Below, in pieces: positions 1 through 8,109 of a stretch of DNA of 8,109 bases. The notes beneath the pieces are model-generated. The model had not been told where the DNA came from. It searched no databases and saw only the letters and a program-made list of their open reading frames with translations. Numbering within the stretch: position 1 is the first letter of the stretch; the number at the start of each line of letters is the position of its first letter. The stretch spans positions 1-8,109 of the IMG/VR virus record IMGVR_UViG_3300005964_000004, one strand, 5' to 3'. Position numbers and translations under genes: made by a program.

Positions 1-659
1 AATGCAAATATATATTCTCTCGGATTATACCCAAATTCAGCGACAAAATGCACATTTTCAGGAACTTCATAATTTTTAAAGTCTTTATGAGAAATTACAA
101 AAAAGTGAACTTTCTTAGCCAAATCTGGAATTTTGGTATTTATTTCTTGGAAAACTCTTATCATTAACTCCATGTTTTTCCTTTTAGTTAGTCCTGAAAC
201 AATGCCAAATTTAACAATATTTGGAAAATCTTTAGACATTTTTAGATTTAACTGGGGGGTTAAATGTTCTGCCTTTTCAACAATTTCAAAATTTATACCA
301 TGAAAAACTGGCAAATTGACATTTAAACCAACTTCCTGCAAATTTTGGGCTGTAAATTTACTATTTGGAATAAATGTTATATCTTTTAATAAATATTGAT
401 TTACAATATTTGTGTTAGGTATACCATCACAAGTTGTATAAAAGTATTTTTTGCCTCTAAATTGATAGAAAGTATAAAGGTATGGGTTTAGGGAAGGTGG
501 ATGGAAAGGCATAAAAATTATTAATTTATCAGATTGTGAAATCAAATTTGGATTTGTTGAAATTGTAACATTTTCACCATTTTTTCTCAAAACTTGAGCT
601 ATATCTTCTGAAACATTTTTTATGGAAGAATAGTTCATAGTCAAGATTGTAGTTTTCAC
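1..659 (-). CDS. Glycosyltransferase, GT-B/GT4-like (SIRV ORF335-like); 3' end lies outside the window
   Basis: Not in the ORF track. Open frame from GTG at 659: MKTTILTMNYSSIKNVSEDIAQVLRKNGENV...FIPNSKFTAQNLQEVG...VFHGINF...FGIVSGLTKRKNMELMIRVF...NVHFVAEFG. The NS-x-FT, HG and G-x3-RKN motifs are typical of GT4. Position next to the zinc-finger and MCP genes matches SIRV. Confidence 0.85.
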   Translation of the reverse strand, partial: MKTTILTMNYSSIKNVSEDIAQVLRKNGENVTISTNPNLISQSDKLIIFMPFHPPSLNPYLYTFYQFRGKKYFYTTCDGIPNTNIVNQYLLKDITFIPNSKFTAQNLQEVGLNVNLPVFHGINFEIVEKAEHLTPQLNLKMSKDFPNIVKFGIVSGLTKRKNMELMIRVFQEINTKIPDLAKKVHFFVISHKDFKNYEVPENVHFVAEFGYNPREYIFA

Positions 660-695
660 GTGAATTTTTTATACGTCATGACATTAAAAAACATT
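660..695. promoter_or_regulatory. Overlapping divergent TATA+GTC promoters sharing the palindrome GTCATGAC (675-682)
   Basis: + strand: TTTATAC-GTC, 21 nt before ATG 696. - strand: TTTTAAT-GTC, 23 nt before GTG 659. Confidence 0.7.
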
Positions 696-860
696 ATGGG
701 TCTCCTGCTTTACGAATGCCCAATTTGCGGAAAAATAGATAAAAATAAAAAGACTATGATTTCCCATTTAAGAAAATATCATCCTGGTGTAAAAATGAGG
801 GATGTAAAGAGAATAAATACTAAAACTTACGAATACCTTGAAACAAAAGTTGAGGACTAA
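696..860 (+). CDS. Small C2H2 zinc-finger protein (SIRV ORF55-like), 54 aa
   Basis: C-x2-C-x12-H-x4-H (CPICGKIDKNKKTMISHLRKYH). ATG 696 is preferred over GTG 660 because of promoter spacing. Confidence 0.85.
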   Translation: MGLLLYECPICGKIDKNKKTMISHLRKYHPGVKMRDVKRINTKTYEYLETKVED

Positions 861-864
861 GTAA

Positions 865-907
865 ATAAAAAAAATAAAATAGCTTATAAGCTATTATTGA
901 TTTTTTT
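865..907. terminator. Probable bidirectional terminator between convergent zinc-finger and MCP genes
   Basis: Perfect 18-bp palindrome AATAGCTTATAAGCTATT (878-895), with an A-tract to the left and a T-tract at 901-907. Confidence 0.55.
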
Positions 908-1310
908 AGCTTACGTAACCAGTTGGTGAACCAGTTATTATATTTGTCACTGCATCAAGAACAGTTGGATTTGCATTAAATGCAGAGATATAATATGCCT
1001 TAAGTCCGTTAATCATATTCACTAGTGCCGGGCCGCCGCCGAGCCTGTTGAGTGCCCTAGCAACCTTAAGACCGAAACCTTGATAAATTGCCCTATTAGG
1101 ACCAGTTATTCCATATTCGCTCAATACTGCAGATACTTGCTCATTCACAGATGTAAATTTAGGAACGTTAGTTTGGAAGTTTTGTTGAGCAGCAGGGCTA
1201 ACGTTAGTTAATATCGTGGATGCTACCGTAGGATTGCTAAATGACGTGAACTTAGCGTTCCATTTTGCATACCTTTGGGAATAGGATCTTGGAGTTCTCC
1301 CCTTTGCCAT
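906..1310 (-). CDS. Major capsid protein, rudiviral (SIRV2 ORF134/gp26 family)
   Basis: 134 aa, MAKGRTPRSYSQRYAKW...GITGPNRAIYQGFGLKVARALNR...GSPTGYVS; very close to the recalled SIRV coat protein. Confidence 0.97.
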   Translation of the reverse strand: MAKGRTPRSYSQRYAKWNAKFTSFSNPTVASTILTNVSPAAQQNFQTNVPKFTSVNEQVSAVLSEYGITGPNRAIYQGFGLKVARALNRLGGGPALVNMINGLKAYYISAFNANPTVLDAVTNIITGSPTGYVS

Positions 1311-1337
1311 TTTTGGTCAAGTACTATTATTATCTTC

Positions 1338-1350
1338 AAATATATAACAA
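1338..1350 (-). promoter_or_regulatory. TATA box of the MCP gene (no GTC)
   Basis: TTATATA on the - strand (1347-1341), 30 nt upstream of ATG 1310. Confidence 0.55.
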
Positions 1351-1498
1351 CCCACGGCTCATAATACATATAATGTATATTACCTGTCGCAATTGTGAAT
1401 TAAATATCGGTAATAACTATGAAAATTTATAACTACTAATTAGACTATACGATAACTGAAAATAAAACATTTAATTGTCAGCCATGAATATGAAAATC

Positions 1499-1819
1499 AT
1501 GGAAGATATAATCATAATTGAATGTCGAAAGTTTACTGATCAAGTGCTGAACTGGCTGAACGCATTTTATCCAACTAATATTTATTATTATCACGTGATG
1601 GATAATGACACTTCGCTAACTTTAAAAATTCGTTTAGTTATGGCACATAATTTATATATAAAAAGAGCAAATGGAATTATAAGTTATATTAAAAGAACTT
1701 TTAGATATTCGCCATATATTAAGGTAAATTATAGATATAACAGACCTTTTTTTGATTTAACAATATTATGCGGTAAACGATATTCAACAATAGCCATTGA
1801 AAAATATAATAAAAGTTAA
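1499..1819 (+). CDS. Hypothetical rudiviral protein, about 106 aa
   Basis: Open frame. TTTAATT-GTC (GTC at 1477) lies 22 nt before ATG 1499, supporting a leaderless start at MEDIIIIECRKF rather than TTG 1475. Confidence 0.7.
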   Translation: MEDIIIIECRKFTDQVLNWLNAFYPTNIYYYHVMDNDTSLTLKIRLVMAHNLYIKRANGIISYIKRTFRYSPYIKVNYRYNRPFFDLTILCGKRYSTIAIEKYNKS

Positions 1820-1849
1820 AAAAATATTATCTTTCTTTATGACTTATAA

Positions 1850-2011
1850 CTATTTAACTCCTCTTTTTTGTAAATATTCCCCTAATGCCTCTTCAATTGC
1901 CTCAGTTAAAGTTATATTATTATTTGCACAATATACTTTCAATTTTCTCTTTAACTCCTTATCTATGTGTACCCCAAATACAATTCTTTCCTTTTGCACT
2001 TGCTTTTCCAT
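1850..2011 (-). CDS. svtR: Ribbon-helix-helix transcription regulator, SvtR family (SIRV ORF56b-like), 53 aa
   Basis: Below the ORF-track cutoff. Hand translation: MEKQVQKERIVFGVHIDKELKRKLKVYCANNNITLTEAIEEALGEYLQKRGVK*. It matches the recalled SvtR pattern VFG-x3-DK-x-LK-x2-LKVYCA-x-NN-x2-LT-x-AIEEA-x2-EYLQKR and has an upstream TATA+GTC (2035-2056). Confidence 0.92.
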   Translation of the reverse strand: MEKQVQKERIVFGVHIDKELKRKLKVYCANNNITLTEAIEEALGEYLQKRGVK

Positions 2012-2109
2012 TTTCCCTCTGTGCAAACATAAGGATTATGACAAATTTATATATTTTGATTCGCTACAAAAAGCTTATTATTAACTGCAATACATAAAAT
2101 AAAATTGAA

Positions 2110-2409
2110 ATGACACTAGGAACGGAAGCATTAGAAGGATTTTTAGTGTTAATGGGCGTTCTAATAGCCAGCTATGTAGTTGGAGAAGTAGTATATCTCT
2201 ACAATCAAAAACAATCAAATCAATCGTTCCAAATTGCAGTCGATCAGATGACAAAATCTACAATTAGTGCAATAGAAAGTATTAAAGACACTACAACTCT
2301 TGGAGTTAATGCGTTATTGAATATGGATACTCTGTCGGATGTAAACGCATTAGCACAGAAAAAGCAAAGTGCCGAACATAGTTCGTCACAACAAACGCAA
2401 ACTAAATAA
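2110..2409 (+). CDS. Virus-associated pyramid protein PVAP (SIRV2 P98 / STIV C92 family), egress
   Basis: N-terminal transmembrane helix (GFLVLMGVLIASYVVGEVVYLY), then DQMTKSTISAIESIKDTTTLGVNALLNMDTL, close to recalled SIRV2 P98. AAAAAG-CTTATTA promoter at about 2068-2080. Confidence 0.92.
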   Translation: MTLGTEALEGFLVLMGVLIASYVVGEVVYLYNQKQSNQSFQIAVDQMTKSTISAIESIKDTTTLGVNALLNMDTLSDVNALAQKKQSAEHSSSQQTQTK

Positions 2410-2410
2410 T

Positions 2411-2755
2411 CTATTTTTTAGACTTAGTCATATAAGATATAACTTTTTTTATATCTCTTTTTGTTTTAGGAACTAATTGTATATTTATATCTGAATGTGA
2501 CGGCATATGTTTATGAATTTTTGAATAATTAAGTTGCTTATTTGTAAAGTATAAGATATGATAATGAAGACCATGAGTCCTATTAGTATATTCTTTAACA
2601 CTGAAAATATGTGAATTTCTATCATGTCCATAAGCATAATTTTTGAATTTTTGAAAAATTGGAATTGTTGAATTGTAGCGATAATTTGTGGCAATAGTGA
2701 TAAAATATGTATAAGTATAAAGAAAGTGATAAATGAAAACTTTTTGACAGTCCAT
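2411..2755 (-). CDS. rep: HUH endonuclease Rep (SIRV ORF119-like replication initiator)
   Basis: RCR motifs in order: I FITIA, II GLHYHIL, III YMTK. TTTAAAT-GTC lies 21 nt before ATG 2755. Confidence 0.9.
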   Translation of the reverse strand: MDCQKVFIYHFLYTYTYFITIATNYRYNSTIPIFQKFKNYAYGHDRNSHIFSVKEYTNRTHGLHYHILYFTNKQLNYSKIHKHMPSHSDINIQLVPKTKRDIKKVISYMTKSKK

Positions 2756-2826
2756 GTGATGAATTGAAAACCTGACATTTAAATGTATATGTCACATTTA
2801 TAAATTCGTCATGAGCATGAACAATA

Positions 2827-3099
2827 ATGAAAGGACAAAAGAACAAATACATCGAATTAAGGATACCATCAAAATACAAAACTCTTTTTTATGAGAAAAG
2901 GGACTTAATAAAACAAGAGATCGACAGAATTCTAAATCAACAAAAACAGTTTAGCGAAATAGAAAGTAGCGAAATTTATGACGAAAGGGTATTTTTCACG
3001 ATTGATGAACTATATTATAAAAAGCTTGAAGAACTGTCAAGGAAATATAATATTAAAATTGCGAAGATAATAAGATCTATATTCTTCCAACTAAGTTAA
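2827..3099 (+). CDS. Putative RHH DNA-binding protein, 90 aa
   Basis: The C-terminal ERVFFTIDELYYKKLEELSRKYNIKIAKIIRSIF fits the RHH strand-helix-helix pattern. TTTATAAA (2797-2804) lies 22 nt before the ATG; T-tracts at 3103-3123 follow the stop. Confidence 0.7.
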   Translation: MKGQKNKYIELRIPSKYKTLFYEKRDLIKQEIDRILNQQKQFSEIESSEIYDERVFFTIDELYYKKLEELSRKYNIKIAKIIRSIFFQLS

Positions 3100-3200
3100 A
3101 TGTTTTTTTATAACGCTTTTTTTGTGATCATTGAGGCAAACTAGCAAGCTAACAAATATATAAATATGTCATATTGCAAAGTTAAAACTAGTGAAGAAAC

Positions 3201-3602
3201 GTGCCAGGCCTTAAAGAAATATTAGATGAGTTAGGCAAGCAAGCAAAACAAAGCAATAAGATAGCATCTAGAATATTAAAAATTAAGGGAATAAAGCGAA
3301 TTGTAGTACAGCTAAATGCAATACCTCAGGACGGAAAAGTAAGATATTCGCTAACCATACACAGTCAAAATAATTTCAGAAAGCAGATCGGAATAACTGC
3401 TAATGATGCTGAAGATTTAAAGCTAATCAGCGAATTTTTAACAAAATATGCAGATTTGCTTAATGAATATGTAAGATTCACACGAAGAAATAATAACACT
3501 GTTCAAGAAGAAGAACTAGAAATGGAAGAAAATGAAGAAAGTGAAAAAGAGGAAAGAAAAGAGAGAAAAAGAGAAAAGAAGAACGTAGAAGAAGAGTTTT
3601 AA
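3201..3602 (+). CDS. Rudiviral single-stranded DNA-binding protein (SIRV2 gp17/ORF131b-like)
   Basis: ELGKQAK...ASRILKIKGIKRIVVQLNA...HSQNNFRKQIGIT core, with a charged disordered tail ending VEEEF; first gene of the gp17-18-19 cluster. Confidence 0.9.
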   Translation: MPGLKEILDELGKQAKQSNKIASRILKIKGIKRIVVQLNAIPQDGKVRYSLTIHSQNNFRKQIGITANDAEDLKLISEFLTKYADLLNEYVRFTRRNNNTVQEEELEMEENEESEKEERKERKREKKNVEEEF

Positions 3603-3627
3603 AACGTCATACCCCTTTTTTTTCTTT

Positions 3628-4935
3628 ATGAGCAGCCCATCCCCGCTTTTGGATAAAGTCAAACCTCACTCTTTTTTTTACAATCCACGTGATAACGAAC
3701 GCATTTTAAATATTATAATTGGCGAAAAACAAATTGACGAGAAAAAGAAAACGGAGATTTTAAAAGCTTATAAGCGTGGAATTGATCAGCAATATTTTAA
3801 CGCCAATTTGCCATTTTTCAATGAAATAAAATTTATCTCAAAAATCACCAACTTTAAAGTTAAAAATGATGAAATAGTAGCAAGATTTCAAAACGGTTTC
3901 ACTGCAAGCTTTGACCCTCATCAAATTGCAGATAATCCAGATGATTTCTATAATTTAATAAGTAGTTATATGTTTGTAAAAATTAAAAAAGGAGTTGAAA
4001 ATTGGTATATTGACGACATTTATTCTATTGAACCGCCAAATAATTATGAAATTGCAAAAGAATTACTCGAACTCGCAAATTCTGAAAAACAAACTTGTGA
4101 TCTTTTATTACAAGCTTTTGGTTATGACCCACAAAAAATGGAAGCTAAAGATGTATTTCTAACTCTCCCTAGACTATTTCCATTATTTAAATCCCCAATT
4201 ACGAAACGTCAAATTAATTATATAGAAATTTCCAATAGAGGAACTGGAAAAACTACGACTTTTATGATTCTTCAGGAAGTATTTAATTTCAGATATTATA
4301 CTGAATCTCCGACTTATGCAAATTTAGTTTATGATGCCAGAAATAATATGTATGGTGCAGTATTTCTCTCAAATGGGTTAATATTTGATGAAATTCAAAC
4401 TTGGAAGAATGGATTTTCTGCCAGGGAATTAAATACTATAAATTCAACATTATCAACAGGAATTGAAAATTGTATTTGGACTAGGGGAGCAGGAACAGAA
4501 TCAAAATCTGCAACTATTCAAAAATGTATTCCAATAATTTACGCTGGAAATCCGCATAGTATGACAATTAATAAACTTAAAACTCCGGATATAGAAGATT
4601 ATCTAGCAAATTATGAAATATTTACTCCGGCAATTTTAGATAGAATTCATATTATCCAATTAGCAATTAAGAAAACTTATGATAAAATTATAAATTCACG
4701 GGTATTATATCCGTCAATTTTGCGGGCTTTGGTTGAACTAATACAACAGAAAATAAATAGCATTAATAATTATGTAACTTGCAATAATTTAGAATCTAGA
4801 AGACAAGAACAATCGACTGATATCCAAATAATTCTTCAGGCTTTAGATATAGATTTAAAAATTGGTGAAAAAACTAACGAAGAAATATGCCAAAGGCTGA
4901 TAGAATTAATGCGATTTTCTAACTTGGAGGCATGA
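3628..4935 (+). CDS. AAA+ ATPase / putative helicase (SIRV2 gp18/ORF436-like)
   Basis: Walker [10 protein letters not shown], Walker B LIFDE, sensor-1 IIYAGN, arginine finger ILDRI; lies between the SSB and Cas4-like genes. Confidence 0.92.
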
Positions 4936-5555
4936 TAATTGTGAATTATGAAGAATTTGTAAAACAGAGTTTTAAGGTAAAATATACAGAAGATACAATA
5001 TTTCCAAGCGAAATCGGAATTTGTTTTAGAAAAAGCTATTTTACCAGAAAATTCGAATTTGAAAAAGGAATTAATGAAATTAGCCTAGACTTGGGAGAAC
5101 AACATCACAGACATATAGAAGAATATTTTACTGAAAAATTGAACTGTAAAAATGAAATTGAAGTTAAGGGAGAAATTGAAGGCATGAAAATTAGTGGCAG
5201 AATTGACTTAATTTGTGGAAATGACTTAATTGAATTAAAAACGATTTCGATTAATTATTTCCAGATAAAAGAATATCATCTCTATCAAATTGCTACATAT
5301 TACTACTTACTCCAGCAACAGAATTACAAAATTGATAATGTGTATATTATATATTTGAACAGAACAAATAGAGAAGTTAAACAATTTCAAATCGGCCAAA
5401 AATTGATAGAAGAATACGCAAAAAAAGCGATTGAATGGATAAAGAAATATAAAGAATACTTGAACGAAAAAGATTATAAAAACGTGCCGGGAGTAAATAA
5501 TTTCTTATGTAAAAATTGTGAATTTAAAGGAAAGTGCTATGGCTCTTTGTTTTAA
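4932..5555 (+). CDS. Cas4-like RecB-family ssDNA nuclease (SIRV2 gp19/ORF207-like)
   Basis: Split Fe-S ligands (GICFRK ... [10 protein letters not shown]), RecB motifs GRID-x-IELKT and QIATY. ATGA overlap with the ATPase stop. GGAGG at 4926-4930 could favour the in-frame GTG 4941. Confidence 0.93.
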
Positions 5556-5607
5556 AAAAATAAAAGGGTTTTTATTTGTCATAGAGCATAATGATATATG
5601 ACAAAAC

Positions 5608-5874
5608 ATGTCCTCCACATATCAAGAAAAAAAGCAACAAATTAAAAACAGAATTTTGAGCATGACAGAACAGGATATATTAGCGTTTTTAAATAAGGCC
5701 TTCGTTTTTAAGGAAAAAGTAAAATTGGTATTCTATACAAAAACAGAGAATGCAATTTCAGGAATGTTGGAAATCGGTAAAAAAACCATAAAATTTGAAA
5801 TCTGGTTTTCTATTCCGTATAATTCTGTAGCTATAACTGTCGCAAAAATAACAAAAGTGTTGAAGGAGGAATAA
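5608..5874 (+). CDS. Small hypothetical protein, 88 aa (N-terminal helices plus beta-rich half)
   Basis: Open frame with its own TTTATTT-GTC promoter (GTC at 5578). Confidence 0.75.
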   Translation: MSSTYQEKKQQIKNRILSMTEQDILAFLNKAFVFKEKVKLVFYTKTENAISGMLEIGKKTIKFEIWFSIPYNSVAITVAKITKVLKEE

Positions 5875-6102: not shown

Positions 6103-6360
6103 TTATTTAACTAGATAAACTTTTTTCTTCTGCCTTCCTGTATCGGGGTTAATTTCAACCCCGATCACAATGTATCCTTTTTGTTGCAAACGATATAAAC
6201 GTCTCATGAAAATGCCTTCATACTTGGAGGCCCACGCAAATTTATTTAATAAATCCTGTTGCCAGGCCTCTCCGCCTACCAGTTCCAAGTAGGCGAGAAT
6301 TTTTAATTCTTTCTTGCCCAACCGGGGCCTTTTAGCCAAACTTTTTTTCTGGTTGTTCAT
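6103..6360 (-). CDS. Winged helix-turn-helix DNA-binding protein, 85 aa
   Basis: LGKKELKILAYL...WQQDL...RRLYRLQQKGYI...GRQKKKVYL is a wHTH pattern. AAAAG-TTTAAATA lies 23 nt before ATG 6360, so the 6447 start is probably over-extended. Confidence 0.8.
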   Translation of the reverse strand: MNNQKKSLAKRPRLGKKELKILAYLELVGGEAWQQDLLNKFAWASKYEGIFMRRLYRLQQKGYIVIGVEINPDTGRQKKKVYLVK

Positions 6361-6574
6361 ACCATACACTATGTAAAAACTTATATTTAAACTTTTGTTT
6401 ATACGTGACCTTGGCCTGTAATAAAAGTGCGAAAAATATATGCACATGTAATATTATCACAAACTCGAGAAAAATTATAGATAAAAATAAGAGATAAAGA
6501 ATTAGGAATATAAAAATTAGAAAAATAAAAAAATTAACTTAATGAAAAGAGAATAAAACAAAAAAATAATTAAA

Positions 6575-6985
6575 TTAAGATAGGTCTAATGACCTCCAGC
6601 CTTCTGGATAACTAAAAACATATAATTTTTGATATTCTTGTAACTTCCCTTGATAATCGTTAGCCCATTCAAAAAGTATGATGACTGTCCTAGATTTTGG
6701 AATTATAGCGTACACAGTTTCATTTGTTGTTGGATAGTCATAGTAATTATTTATTTCGATCGCTTCAATTTTCCCGTAAAGCATCTGAAACCTTCCATAG
6801 TCCCTAAAACTATTTCCTGGCCTTTTCCATTCATTAAGAGTTAATATAAACTGTGCTTCAAAATTCCCTTCTTTTATCACTTTATTTATTAGTTTGACTA
6901 ATTCTTCCTGACTCAGATTTTCTTGACTCAGTCGGGTTATATCTTGATTTGACTTCTCTTCTTCTTTACCCATTTCTTCGCTCAC
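6575..6985 (-). CDS. Terminal hypothetical protein, about 136 aa, acidic N-terminus; candidate early/anti-defence gene
   Basis: Open frame. The AGGTGA Shine-Dalgarno (6996-6991) lies 5 nt before GTG 6985; T-rich tract downstream. Confidence 0.78.
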   Translation of the reverse strand: MSEEMGKEEEKSNQDITRLSQENLSQEELVKLINKVIKEGNFEAQFILTLNEWKRPGNSFRDYGRFQMLYGKIEAIEINNYYDYPTTNETVYAIIPKSRTVIILFEWANDYQGKLQEYQKLYVFSYPEGWRSLDLS

Positions 6986-6989
6986 ATCC

Positions 6990-7055
6990 TTCACCTGTAA
7001 TATACATATGTATCTTCTGCTATATAAACTTTTCTCTATCTTTGCATCTTTGCAC
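6990..7055 (-). promoter_or_regulatory. Strong consensus BRE-TATA promoter with an operator-like palindrome
   Basis: TGCAAAGATGCAAAGATAGAGAAAAG-TTTATATA-GCAGAAG-ATACATATGTAT-ATTAC-AGGTGA; perfect palindrome at 7002-7013. Confidence 0.75.
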
Positions 7056-7230
7056 TTTTATTTTTCCAACAATATTATTTTTCCACTTCCAACATTTTAT
7101 CCTTTAACTTGCAAAAATATTTTAAATCATTTCTCCTCTTTTTGTCTTTGCAACTAATGTTTCCGAATGAACATGCTGTATACAACACTGTATACTCCGG
7201 AGAAATATCTCTGGCGGGTTTGCCGTGTAA

Positions 7231-7360
7231 ATTATAACTACTAACTACTAACTAACTAGTTAGCTAATTGTTATATTGCTATATTGCATATTGCAGTAAC
7301 TAGTAAGTTAATAGTTATATAATTATGTAGTTGTATAGTTGTATAATATAATTATATAAG
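7231..7360. repeat. Low-complexity short tandem repeats
   Basis: TAACTAC/TAAC units, ATATTGC x3, TAGTTGTA x2, palindrome CTAACTAGTTAG. Confidence 0.7.
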
Positions 7361-7695
7361 AAGAAAGATAAAGTGGACTACGGATATATGCTTTCTTCTG
7401 CTGGTATTTAAATCTTTCTTCATAACCTTCCAATTTTGCAAGACTGAAGCTGAAGAAATTGGATAAAAAATTCAAAACTGCAAAGTTGGAAAGATGAAAG
7501 TATATAAATGTTTTGTTCTAAACTCCCAATTTCAGCACCGCCAACTGAAAAAAATTGGCGAGAATGGAAATGGAAAAACAAACTTGAAACAGAATAATGT
7601 AACTTATAATATGTTTAGTAACTAAAAGCTTACAATTAGGAGTGGACTTTTTTCTAATTAATAGTTATATAGTTCCCAATTAATATATTCGCAAC

Positions 7696-8048
7696 ATGTA
7701 GAATTAGTTGTAACTTACAAGTTTACAATAATATAACTTTATCTAGCAATATGACAGATTATTTGTAACTTACAATTTACCAACTTATTAGCTTTATTTA
7801 GTAAATTGCACGAAATGATAGATTATTTGTAAGTTAGGAATTTACAATTTATACTGTTTTTCAAAATAATAACGCAAAATGATAGATTATTTGTAAGTTA
7901 CAATTTATCAACTTTATTGCGAAATTTACGCAAAATGACAAATTAATTGGAATTTCCAATTTCTCAATTTACCCGTGAAAAAAACTTAATTTACGAAAAA
8001 AACGCAAAATATTGGAATTTTCAATTTCTCAACTTTATTGCGAAATTT
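7696..8048. repeat. Degenerate direct-repeat array with a palindromic core TTG(T/G)AA-N-TT(A/C)CAA
   Basis: Units start at about 7696, 7751, 7815, 7879 and 7935, with a truncated unit at about 8002. Exact 20-bp duplication at 7908-7927 and 8029-8048; ACGCAAAAT at 7872, 7928 and 8002. Confidence 0.85.
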
Positions 8049-8109
8049 TCCCAAAAAACGATAAAAACCGCAAGTCCTCAGCTAGGGCTCTGCAATTGCA
8101 AAATCCTGG

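What the first reader, a model, noticed from the sequence alone, without database searches (positions are those of the whole stretch)
7372..7654. Back-to-back orphan promoters in the terminal region: candidate viral non-coding RNA locus
Seen: two divergent BRE-TATA elements, GAAAGA-TTTAAATA (- strand, TATA 7412-7405) and GAAAG-TATATAAA (+ strand, 7501-7508). Each is preceded by the same 13-mer in inverted arrangement (TTCCAATTTTGCA 7428-7440 / TGCAAAGTTGGAA 7479-7491, one mismatch). The leftward one also shares the post-TATA element AGCAGAAGA..CATAT with the promoter of the 136-aa gene. Neither leads to a real ORF. The rightward unit would run from about 7532 to the T6 tract at 7648-7653, about 120 nt. 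Inference: these are small RNAs expressed from early-type promoters, possibly regulatory, anti-defence or replication-priming.
Basis: partly seen in the sequence, partly recalled or inferred. Interest (0 to 1): 0.72.

Follow-up and report, generated by a model that had tools for sequence, protein, structure and literature searches.

The report
Conserved orphan promoter in rudiviral terminus
The leftward "orphan promoter" is real: it is the best-conserved non-coding element of the terminal repeat in Sulfolobus rod-shaped viruses, a strong early-type promoter with no gene behind it, while the rightward one is a lineage-specific, decayed duplicate with no sign of function.

Summary
The window is the whole contig IMGVR_UViG_3300005964_000004, the right-hand 8.1 kb of a rudivirus, and it runs to the hairpin terminus.

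The leftward (inward) BRE/TATA at 7418-7405(-) is the conservation peak of the whole terminal 1.1 kb: mean pairwise identity 0.81-0.84 against 0.34 overall. It occurs in every Icerudivirus and Usarudivirus, in Stygiolobus virus SRV and in many metagenome contigs. It is always in the terminal repeat, mostly about 600-1270 bp from the end, always points inward and never has an ORF. A 6-9-bp dyad brackets the predicted start site and covaries (5 of 9 pairs with compensatory changes). Most relatives then have a T7-T8 run; this virus and its closest relatives do not.

The rightward TATATAAA at 7501-7508 lies in the least conserved stretch (0.11-0.16). It is a direct-repeat copy of the inward promoter's upstream module, and homologous sites in other lineages have no TATA. 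The proposed 120-nt RNA has no structure signal (z = -0.01).

Verdict: one conserved, ORF-less ITR transcription unit or TBP/TFB-loading site of unknown role, plus a relic duplicate. This is not a divergent pair of ncRNA genes. No expression data could be checked.

The parts
7357..7440 (-). Conserved inward-facing orphan promoter block of the ITR: upstream box, BRE, TATA and the dyad-bracketed start region.
   Evidence: It is near-invariant in a 17-sequence alignment. It is the peak of a 5-lineage ITR conservation profile, 0.81-0.84 at 7396-7435. The SIRV2 counterpart matches all Ice- and Usarudivirus records at 80-86% identity, with no feature annotated under it other than the ITR repeat_region line in some records.
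7427..7437 (-). Upstream box AAATTGGAAGG, conserved as AAATTGGAAG in relatives.
7405..7418 (-). BRE GAAAGA (7418-7413) plus TATA TTTAAATA (7412-7405).
   Evidence: It has the same core as the early-gene consensus (purine-rich BRE + TTTAWATA) of PMC11065993.
7391..7399 (-). Promoter-proximal dyad arm: AGAAGAAAG on the - strand, at +6 to +14 after the TATA.
7368..7390 (-). 23-nt spacer of the dyad. It holds the predicted start site (about 7380-7384) and the conserved GT(T)AGTGGA-type box, which reads GTAGTCCAC here.
   Evidence: The start-site position is inferred from TATA spacing, calibrated on the leaderless ATG at +24 of the 6391(-) promoter.
7359..7367 (-). Distal dyad arm: CTTTCTTCT on the - strand, starting at +38 after the TATA as in all relatives.
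   Evidence: For covariation, 99.4% of cells are paired, 5 of 9 pairs show double changes and 0 of 500 shuffles reach the observed score.
7233..7357 (.). AT-rich, repeat- and palindrome-rich tract downstream of the orphan promoter, with arms at 7242-7262 and 7297-7317.
   Evidence: In relatives the tract is only 13-19% G+C. The strong palindrome is specific to some lineages.
7500..7532 (.). Second, decayed copy of the promoter's upstream module plus TATA, a direct repeat of 7404-7436.
   Evidence: D5; p about 0.003. Homologous sites in L028, L031 and L032 have no TATA. Mean identity is 0.11-0.16.
7441..7608 (.). Lineage-specific segment carrying the right 13-mer (7479-7491), a small G+C-rich hairpin (7539-7544 with 7555-7560) and the 43-aa ORF 7494-7625.
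   Evidence: There is no blastn match in 50,697 phage and archaeal-virus records. It was found only in L050.
7608..7620 (-). 13-nt motif TACTAAACATATT (- strand), perfectly conserved in Iceland and USA rudiviruses. Relatives have 1-2 copies upstream of the orphan promoter.
   Evidence: The copies lie at -100 and at -173 or -208 from the TATA, and each is preceded by a RAAACCAAAAC-type box.
7643..7653 (-). Box GAAAAAAGTCC (- strand), which takes the place of the RAAACCAAAAC box of the motif unit.
   Evidence: Most relatives have GGTTTCC or GGTTCCC here on the + strand, so the T6 is not conserved.
7021..7028 (-). TATA of the first gene (6575-6985, 136 aa), which shares CAGAAGA..CATAT with the orphan promoter.
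   Evidence: The gene is homologous to SIRV5 ORF1 and SIRV8 ORF3.
7690..8109 (.). Terminal 55-65-bp direct repeats and the terminal loop sequence; this is the genome end.
   Evidence: The last 22 nt are flipped in L050.

Best explanation
The finding lies 455-737 nt from the hairpin terminus, inside the non-coding core of the rudiviral inverted terminal repeat.

Leftward element. It is a bona fide strong archaeal promoter of the early (anti-defence-gene) class, with a purine-rich BRE, TTTAAATA and an AAATTGGAAG upstream box. It is kept in both terminal repeats of Sulfolobus and Stygiolobus rudiviruses. It always faces inward and has no gene of its own. Host TBP/TFB/RNA polymerase should initiate about 23 nt after the TATA, near 7382 on the - strand. 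That point lies inside a covarying dyad whose arms sit about 12-20 bp upstream and about 16-24 bp downstream of the start.

In most relatives a T7-T8 run follows at +43 to +60, so the product would be a non-coding RNA of only about 25-40 nt. This virus and its nearest relatives lack that run. Here the transcript could continue about 265-270 nt through the AT-rich palindromic tract to a T5 at 7109-7105.

What selection maintains is therefore either occupancy and firing at this site, or the tiny RNA itself. My preferred reading is inference, not shown: a cis-acting unit that is insulated by T-runs and regulated through the dyad, and that loads the transcription machinery next to the extremely AT-rich ITR tract.

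Rightward element. It is a relic. An old tandem duplication copied the promoter's upstream half, and only in this lineage does the copy still contain a TATA-like octamer.
For: - Identity and location.
- Conservation: exact-pattern scans found the element in 8 IMG/VR and 20 metagenome stretches. Two of the metagenome stretches look like chance matches, and several stretches duplicate the window or each other. All rudiviral copies point inward. Where the contig seems to reach the end, the element lies 607-772 nt from it; in the partial isolate records it lies at about 1040-1270.
- Many records hold two copies, one per ITR.
- The block is near-invariant and is the conservation maximum of the terminal 1.1 kb.
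- Promoter class: the BRE+TTTAWATA core and the terminal, inward arrangement match the early regulatory sequence described in PMC11065993. The composite motif is enriched in the window.
- No gene: there is no ORF of 40 aa or more behind any copy. The first gene downstream differs between viruses: aca8, or unrelated genes of 65, 108, 112 or 136 aa.
- Dyad.
- T-runs: present in 19 of 22 lineages.
- Rightward element.
- No host copy was found.
Against: - No transcript data were available. Kessler 2004, Quax 2013 and Okutan 2013 are not held, so a start site here may already be known or already excluded.
- With the start at +23, the proximal dyad arm is not transcribed, so a promoter-only model does not explain why the two arms covary. 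Several G-U pairs occur on the inward strand against at most one unpaired cell. This hints at pairing within one strand, either RNA from further upstream or displaced single-stranded DNA.
- The free hairpin is predicted to be melted at 78 C.
- The T-run is missing in the window itself, so 'short terminated RNA' does not hold for this virus.
- The orientation of the 7501-7508 box is ambiguous: the BRE fits the + strand better and the TATA fits the - strand better.
Confidence: 0.55

Rival explanations
1. Both promoters are active and each gives a functional small RNA: about 120 nt rightward (7532-7653) and a leftward RNA.
For: The rightward unit is self-consistent on paper. It has GAAAG+TATATAAA, no T-run until the T6 at 7648-7653, and both the TATA and the T6 are kept in L050.
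Against: - The segment is absent from all isolates.
- Homologous sites in L028, L031 and L032 lack a TATA.
- This is the least conserved stretch of the ITR.
- The fold z-score is -0.01 and there is no Rfam hit.
- L050 has a 12-nt indel and several substitutions inside the proposed RNA.
- The 3' end of the proposed RNA overlaps a DNA motif unit shared by all rudiviruses, in which the T6 is not conserved.
Confidence: 0.1
2. The conserved block is not used as a promoter. It is a DNA-level element, with the resemblance to a promoter being secondary. One form is a stem-loop on the displaced inward-sense single strand during strand-displacement replication, for example a lagging-strand priming or protein-loading site. 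The other form is a dyad bound by a viral dimer for replication, resolution or packaging.
For: - Strong covariation of the arms, with five different stem sequences including GCAAGC/GCTTGC in SRV.
- G-U (G-T) pairs occur only on the inward strand. By my inference from the published Rep-nick model (PMC5062984), this is the strand displaced from the terminus.
- The loop box is conserved.
- The element sits beside AT-rich palindromes.
Against: - BRE, TATA and the upstream box are the most conserved part, more so than the dyad. They match the strong-promoter consensus exactly.
- A 6-9-bp AT-rich stem with a 23-29-nt loop is predicted to be unfolded at 78 C.
- The published nick site of Rep is at the terminus, not here (abstract-level knowledge; the paper is not held).
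Confidence: 0.2
3. It is a distal second promoter of the first terminal gene. It would give a long 5' leader whose T-run and dyad act as an attenuator.
For: - It has the same orientation as the first gene.
- The spacing to the next TTTAWATA box, where one was found, is mostly 336-411 nt, with outliers up to 540.
- The post-TATA CAGAAGA..CATAT is shared with the 136-aa gene promoter here and with the SIRV3 gp02 (acrID1) promoter.
- In the window no T5 or longer run occurs before 7109.
Against: - Each first gene has its own strong promoter.
- The first gene is unrelated between viruses while the orphan unit is constant.
- The T7-T8 runs, doubled in Iceland viruses, should stop most read-through.
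Confidence: 0.1
4. The region encodes small proteins. One candidate is a leaderless hydrophobic 21-29-aa peptide behind the inward promoter in relatives. The other is the 43-aa ORF 7494-7625(+) here.
For: - An ATG at +21 to +23 opens a 21-29-codon hydrophobic ORF in SIRV2, 3, 5, 7, 8, 9 and 10 and in three metagenome contigs.
- L050 keeps the 43-aa ORF open, with an in-frame 12-nt deletion.
Against: - The mini-ORF is ATG-TAG, frame-shifted, 8-11 codons long or absent in V3, V60, L011, L035, L031, L032, SRV and the window.
- T-rich DNA gives hydrophobic codons in any frame.
- The 43-aa ORF starts upstream of the TATA and ends inside the pan-rudiviral DNA motif. It has no PHROG match and no counterpart in other viruses.
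Confidence: 0.05

Closest known systems
Early / anti-defence-gene (ADG) regulatory sequence of rudiviruses (Bhoobalan-Chitty et al. 2024, PMC11065993)
   Same: Both have a purine-rich BRE directly before TTTAWATA, lie near the genome termini and fire inward. There is virus-specific conserved flanking sequence. The post-TATA CAGAAGA..CATAT is shared with the window's 136-aa gene promoter and with the SIRV3 gp02 (acrID1) promoter.
   Different: That family is defined upstream of single small genes, and its pipeline only scanned 100 bp before start codons. This copy has no ORF in any virus and is far more conserved across genera than ADG promoters. It has its own upstream box, a covarying dyad around the start site and usually an immediate T7-T8 run.
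Poxvirus telomere resolution sequences that double as late promoters (recalled from memory; not checked here)
   Same: Both are promoter-like elements inside the ITR of a linear dsDNA virus with hairpin ends. Neither serves a gene, and the poxvirus element gives short non-coding transcripts. Rudiviral replication has long been compared with that of poxviruses (PMC5062984).
   Different: The poxvirus element abuts the hairpin and points toward it. This one is about 700 bp inside and points inward. No link to resolution is shown.
Single-strand origins of rolling-circle plasmids and filamentous-phage minus-strand origins, where RNA polymerase makes a roughly 20-nt primer on a folded strand (from memory)
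   Same: Both have a promoter, a very short RNA, a stem-loop with a conserved loop and a setting of strand-displacement replication started by a Rep protein.
   Different: There the promoter is formed by the folded single strand. Here BRE/TATA lies outside the stem, and no complementary copy was found that could make it double-stranded.
Bacterial-type intrinsic terminator or attenuator (stem plus T-run)
   Same: Both have a covarying stem directly followed by T7-T8 in most relatives.
   Different: The proximal arm starts only 3-6 nt after the TATA, so it is not in the RNA made from this promoter. A T5-T6 run about 45 nt upstream would stop incoming transcripts. Archaeal termination needs no hairpin. 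The window lacks the T-run.

Membership tests
Archaeal (Sulfolobales) BRE/TATA promoter | An 8-bp TATA box of the TTTAWATA type with a purine-rich BRE immediately upstream. | tested here: met
   Leftward: GAAAGA+TTTAAATA at 7418-7405(-), invariant in type across relatives. Rightward: on the + strand the BRE is good but the TATA matches 6 of 8; on the - strand the TATA matches 8 of 8 but the BRE is poorer.
Archaeal (Sulfolobales) BRE/TATA promoter | Transcription initiates about 23-27 nt downstream of the TATA. | not testable with these tools
   No RNA data were available. The position is inferred only from spacing: the leaderless ATG at +24 of the 6391(-) promoter.
Rudiviral early/ADG regulatory sequence (PMC11065993) | A strong core promoter plus flanking sequence shared with other early promoters of the same genome. 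| tested here: met
   Leftward: the core is identical in type, and CAGAAGA..CATAT is shared with the 7028(-) promoter. Rightward: the upstream stretch 7474-7495 is 86% complementary to 7038-7059 (I5), but this is weakened in L050.
Rudiviral early/ADG regulatory sequence (PMC11065993) | It precedes a small protein-coding gene, within about 100 bp of the start codon. | tested here: not met
   There is no ORF of 40 aa or more behind any of about 25 distinct copies. The mini-ORF is not conserved.
Structured non-coding RNA gene | Fold stability above background, or a conserved RNA structure within the transcribed part. | tested here: not met
   Rightward 7532-7653: z = -0.01. Leftward 7383-7105: z = -4.0, but this comes from a DNA palindrome that is lineage-specific, with z from +0.6 to -5.2 among relatives. 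The covarying dyad has one arm upstream of the predicted start.
Structured non-coding RNA gene | A match to a described RNA family. | tested here: not met
   Rfam 15 at E up to 1 gave only two sub-threshold miRNA-model hits, at E 0.19 and 0.29.
Structured non-coding RNA gene | Conserved promoter and terminator delimiting the same unit in relatives. | tested here: inconclusive
   Leftward: the promoter is universal. The T7-T8 run at +43 to +60 is present in 19 of 22 lineages, but not in the window or L031, and in L032 it is only T5 at +54 with a T6+ run at +60. Rightward: it is conserved only in L050.
Intrinsic terminator-like stem plus T-run | Both stem arms lie in the RNA and are followed by a T-run. 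| tested here: not met
   The proximal arm lies at +3 to +14 after the TATA, which is upstream of the predicted start. The window has no T-run after the stem.

The most novel reading that the evidence does not exclude
The ITR unit (motif units, then strong inward promoter, covarying stem-loop, T-run and a 13-19% G+C tract) is a cis-acting replication element of rudiviruses. Two forms are possible. In the first, transcription or a primer RNA of about 25-40 nt made here opens or primes DNA synthesis about 0.7 kb inside each terminus. In the second, the stem-loop on the displaced strand is the lagging-strand initiation signal. This would be a second origin-type function beside the Rep nick at the hairpin. 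The same module is duplicated internally in contig L028, which suggests that it works as a portable cassette.
Probability: 0.15. Interest if true: 0.75.

Novelty: new variant of a known kind. Interest (0 to 1): 0.5.

Why it matters
Rudiviruses are the main model for linear archaeal viruses with hairpin ends, yet the non-coding part of their terminal repeats carries no annotation beyond, in some records, a repeat_region line spanning the ITR. This analysis shows that the best-conserved sequence of the terminal region is not a gene and not the terminal repeats. It is an ORF-less promoter of the early class with a covarying dyad, kept across at least three genera and two continents.

If it fires, it is probably among the first sites occupied by the host transcription machinery after entry. 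It could regulate, insulate or prime events at the termini. It also warns that motif-based discovery of anti-defence genes will meet strong early promoters that have no gene.

The element can be tested directly in the SIRV2 / S. islandicus LAL14/1 system, and existing RNA-seq data may already hold the answer.

Tried and rejected
1. Leaderless hydrophobic micro-ORF behind the inward promoter. It is present in some viruses. In others, including the window, it is ATG-TAG, frame-shifted, truncated or absent. Rejected.
2. The 43-aa ORF 7494-7625 and the two - strand ORFs (7323-7475, 7420-7581). They have no PHROG hits and no homologous DNA outside L050. Rejected as unlikely.
3. Rfam scan. Nothing found.
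4. Host mimicry or a provirus copy of the promoter, tested with a genome-contig scan. It gave only a chance hit in a Parachlamydiales MAG.
5. An Aca8 repressor gene in the window. tblastn with SIRV1, SIRV2 and SIRV3 Aca8 found none, so regulation by a window-encoded Aca8 cannot be claimed.
6. Exact-protein look-ups of the 139-aa and 136-aa products failed. A homology search and context look-ups then gave L050, the only close relative that spans the finding.
7. The AT-rich palindrome as a conserved structure. The z-scores vary from +0.6 to -5.2, so only the AT-richness is general.
8. Reading the TACTAAACATATT units as promoters. The spacing of the nearby TATA-like boxes to the motif differs by about 9 nt between Iceland and USA viruses, so this was not adopted.
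9. Literature. Kessler 2004, Quax 2013, Okutan 2013 and Oke 2011 are not held. Searches for rudiviral ITR promoters or ncRNAs found nothing specific.

Full report
**Source and setting.** A 29-nt string from the finding occurs once in IMG/VR, in IMGVR_UViG_3300005964_000004, an 8109-bp contig identical to the window. Over 1-5810 the window is 77-80% identical to Yellowstone Sulfolobus islandicus rod-shaped viruses, and shorter parts match SIRV1, SIRV2 and SIRV3. The last 420 nt are 55-65-bp direct repeats of the kind found in rudiviral inverted terminal repeats (ITRs). A close relative, L050 (90.9% identity over window 6991-8100), carries the last 22 nt in reverse-complement orientation. This is what flip-flop of a terminal hairpin loop would produce, so the window ends at the genome terminus. 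The finding lies 455-737 nt from it.

**The observation.** Every motif is at the stated coordinates.
- A composite purine-BRE+TTTAWATA pattern matches 4 times at three sites in the window (6391-, 7028-, 7412-), against 0.4 matches expected. All three sites point inward.
- The rightward box reads TATATAAA on the + strand and TTTATATA on the - strand.
- A 13-mer inverted pair of this quality arises in 3.7% of shuffles of the region.
- 7404-7436 and 7500-7532 form a 33-nt direct repeat (25 identities) that arises in 0.3% of shuffles. The two TATA modules are therefore copies in the same orientation.

**The leftward element is a pan-rudiviral ITR feature.**
- A degenerate pattern for TATA plus the post-TATA box found 8 IMG/VR and 20 metagenome stretches. 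Two of these (L024, L029) look like chance hits.
- In every rudiviral copy the element points away from the nearest contig end. In contigs that seem to reach the terminus it lies 607-772 nt from that end, and in the partial isolate records at about 1040-1270.
- The SIRV2 counterpart (record TATA 768-775) matches all Icerudivirus and Usarudivirus records at 80-86% identity, usually at two places per record (one per ITR). It matches Stygiolobus virus SRV weakly. The only feature annotated under any match is the ITR 'repeat_region' line in some records.
- In a five-lineage alignment of the terminal 1.1 kb (window, SIRV8, SIRV2, L028, SRV) mean pairwise identity is 0.34. The maximum, 0.81-0.84, falls on window 7396-7435. 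This is above the terminal repeats (up to 0.72) and the first-gene promoter (0.57-0.60).
- No copy has an ORF of 40 aa or more behind it. The first gene downstream differs between viruses: aca8 in SIRV1, 2 and 3, and unrelated genes of 65, 108, 112 or 136 aa elsewhere.

**Anatomy of the leftward element, read on the inward strand**:
- an AAATTGGAAG box;
- a purine-rich BRE;
- TTTAWATA;
- a 6-9-nt arm beginning 3-6 nt after the TATA;
- a 23-29-nt spacer with a conserved GT(T)AGTGGA-type box;
- the complementary arm, always beginning at +38 (+39 in SRV).

The arms differ between lineages but stay complementary. They are AGAAGAAAG/CTTTCTTCT in the Yellowstone viruses, the related metagenome lineages and the window. 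They are AGAAGAACC/GGTTCTTTT in SIRV2, AGAACC/GGTTCT in SIRV5 and SIRV7, AGAAGG/CCTTCT in SIRV3, and GCAAGC/GCTTGC in SRV. On a structure-aware alignment of 21 distinct copies, 99.4% of cells pair and 5 of 9 pairs show changes on both sides. No shuffle out of 500 and no slid register approaches the observed score (this alignment was fitted to the structure).

In 19 of 22 lineages a T7-T8 run follows at +43 to +60. The window has no run of T5 or more before +288, L031 none before +195, and L032 has only a T5 at +54 with a T6+ run at +60. The window's close relatives L049, L050 and L051, which were not in that count, also lack the run. A T5-T6 run also sits about 45 nt upstream of the TATA in relatives.

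**What the leftward element would make.** The 6391(-) promoter of this window has an in-frame ATG 24 nt after its TATA, and the PHROG match begins just after it. This calibrates initiation at about +23. For the orphan promoter this gives a start near 7382(-), inside the spacer, so the proximal arm is not transcribed. In most relatives the RNA would be only about 25-40 nt. In this virus it could run about 265-270 nt through the AT-rich palindromic tract to T5 at 7109-7105. That stretch folds far better than shuffles (z = -4.0). The palindrome is lineage-specific, however, with z from +0.6 to -5.2 among relatives, whereas low G+C (13-19%) is general. A leaderless hydrophobic micro-ORF seen in some viruses is destroyed in others and is absent here, so it is not coding.

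**Relation to what is known.** Bhoobalan-Chitty et al. (PMC11065993) showed that early, mostly anti-defence genes at rudiviral termini share a regulatory sequence built around a strong BRE plus TTTAWATA, probably repressed by Aca8. Their pipeline examined 100 bp upstream of start codons, so an ORF-less copy would not have been listed. The orphan promoter has that core. It shares CAGAAGA..CATAT with the window's 136-aa gene promoter and with the SIRV3 gp02 (acrID1) promoter. It fails the family's gene criterion, and it adds a dyad, its own upstream box and usually an immediate T-run. No Aca8 homologue is encoded in the window. No copy exists in 185,579 prokaryotic species genomes apart from one chance hit.

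**The rightward element.**
- Window 7441-7608 has no match in 50,697 phage and archaeal-virus records and is absent from all isolates.
- The more distant contigs L028, L031 and L032 have a homologous second copy of the upstream module, but no TATA at the corresponding site.
- Only L050 keeps the box. In L050 the right 13-mer has two further mismatches, and a 12-nt deletion plus several substitutions fall inside the proposed RNA.
- The stretch 7466-7554 is the least conserved part of the ITR (0.11-0.16).
- The proposed 122-nt RNA folds no better than shuffles (z = -0.01), and Rfam gives nothing.
- Its last third is a different kind of feature. The 13-nt TACTAAACATATT motif (7620-7608 on the - strand) is perfectly conserved in Iceland and USA viruses. 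It occurs in one or two copies at fixed distances upstream of the orphan promoter, each preceded by a RAAACCAAAAC-type box.
- The window's second copy resembles the relatives' promoter module (about 85% by my count) more than it resembles the window's own first copy (76%). This fits an old tandem duplication that has since decayed.

**Interpretation.**
- Shown: the leftward element is a strongly selected, ORF-less, inward-facing promoter-type element of the ITR, with a covarying dyad.
- Inferred: that it fires, where it starts, and that T-runs stop it.
- Not explained by the promoter model: the covariation of an arm that would not be transcribed, and a slight excess of G-U over unpaired cells on the inward strand. 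By my reading of the Rep-nick model (PMC5062984), the inward strand is the one displaced during replication from the terminus. This keeps a DNA-level role alive. Against it, the free stem is predicted to be melted at 78 C.
- My commitment: a self-contained, dyad-regulated transcription unit or loading site as the most likely mechanism (0.55), and a cis-acting replication role as the most interesting reading not excluded (0.15).
- The rightward 'promoter' is best read as a relic.

**Limits.** No transcript data could be examined, and four key papers were not held. A mapped start site here may therefore already exist in the literature.

Noticed in passing
window 8088-8109; L050 1-22: The last 22 nt of the window occur in reverse-complement orientation at the end of the 91%-identical contig L050. 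This looks like flip-flop of the terminal hairpin loop, so both assemblies read through the covalently closed end.
   Followed up: partly
window 7608-7620 (- strand); SIRV2 L037 560 and 668; SIRV8 and others: A 13-nt motif, TACTAAACATATT, is perfectly conserved between Icelandic and Yellowstone rudiviruses. It occurs in 1-2 copies at -100 and at -173 or -208 from the orphan TATA (SIRV1 -76 and -184; SIRV3 one copy at -124). Each copy is preceded about 25 nt earlier by a RAAACCAAAAC-type box. It is probably a protein-binding site, and it is unannotated.
   Followed up: partly
window 6384-6391 (- strand), ORF 6103-6447: A strong BRE/TATA lies inside the longest ORF. An in-frame ATG sits 24 nt after it, and the PHROG_9113 match begins at residue 35. 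The real gene is probably a leaderless one of about 85 aa, the same over-extension reported for SIRV2 aca8.
   Followed up: partly
L003 1365-1392, L010, L018, L028 (four places), L031 2201: Several relatives carry units ending in GAATTGAAAG. From memory, these resemble Sulfolobus CRISPR repeats (about 19 of 24 for SIRV10). They lie about 200-250 nt inward of the orphan promoter on the opposite strand. The window's ITR has none. They may be solitary repeat units of the kind reported in archaeal viruses.
   Followed up: no
L028 2705-3055 (+), also weaker at 1333-1395 and 247-308: Contig Ga0080003_1002852 holds a second, internal copy of the whole module: TATA, dyad, T-run, AT-rich tract and the repeat-like unit. 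The covariance-model E-value is 3e-8. The first 3.6 kb of that contig have almost no ORFs.
   Followed up: partly
L032 (Ga0208314_102254, 5075 bp): The first 908 nt are identical to the reverse complement of the other end, and the orphan promoter lies 608 nt from each end. This is either a very small ITR-bounded element or defective genome, or an assembly fold-back.
   Followed up: no
window 7539-7560: A perfect 6-bp G+C-rich inverted repeat, CGCCAA / TTGGCG, has an A7 (+) or T7 (-) loop. It is the only G+C-rich spot in the lineage-specific segment and is conserved in L050. On the - strand the T7 would stop inward transcription from the terminus.
   Followed up: no
window 7233-7357 versus L049, L050 and L051: The AT-rich palindromic tract is the main site of indels among close relatives. 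The window, its close relatives and L031, which have no T-run soon after the dyad, include the three strongest palindromes measured (window, L050 and L031; z about -4.7 to -5.2). L032, which has only a T5 there, is at z about -1.9.
   Followed up: partly
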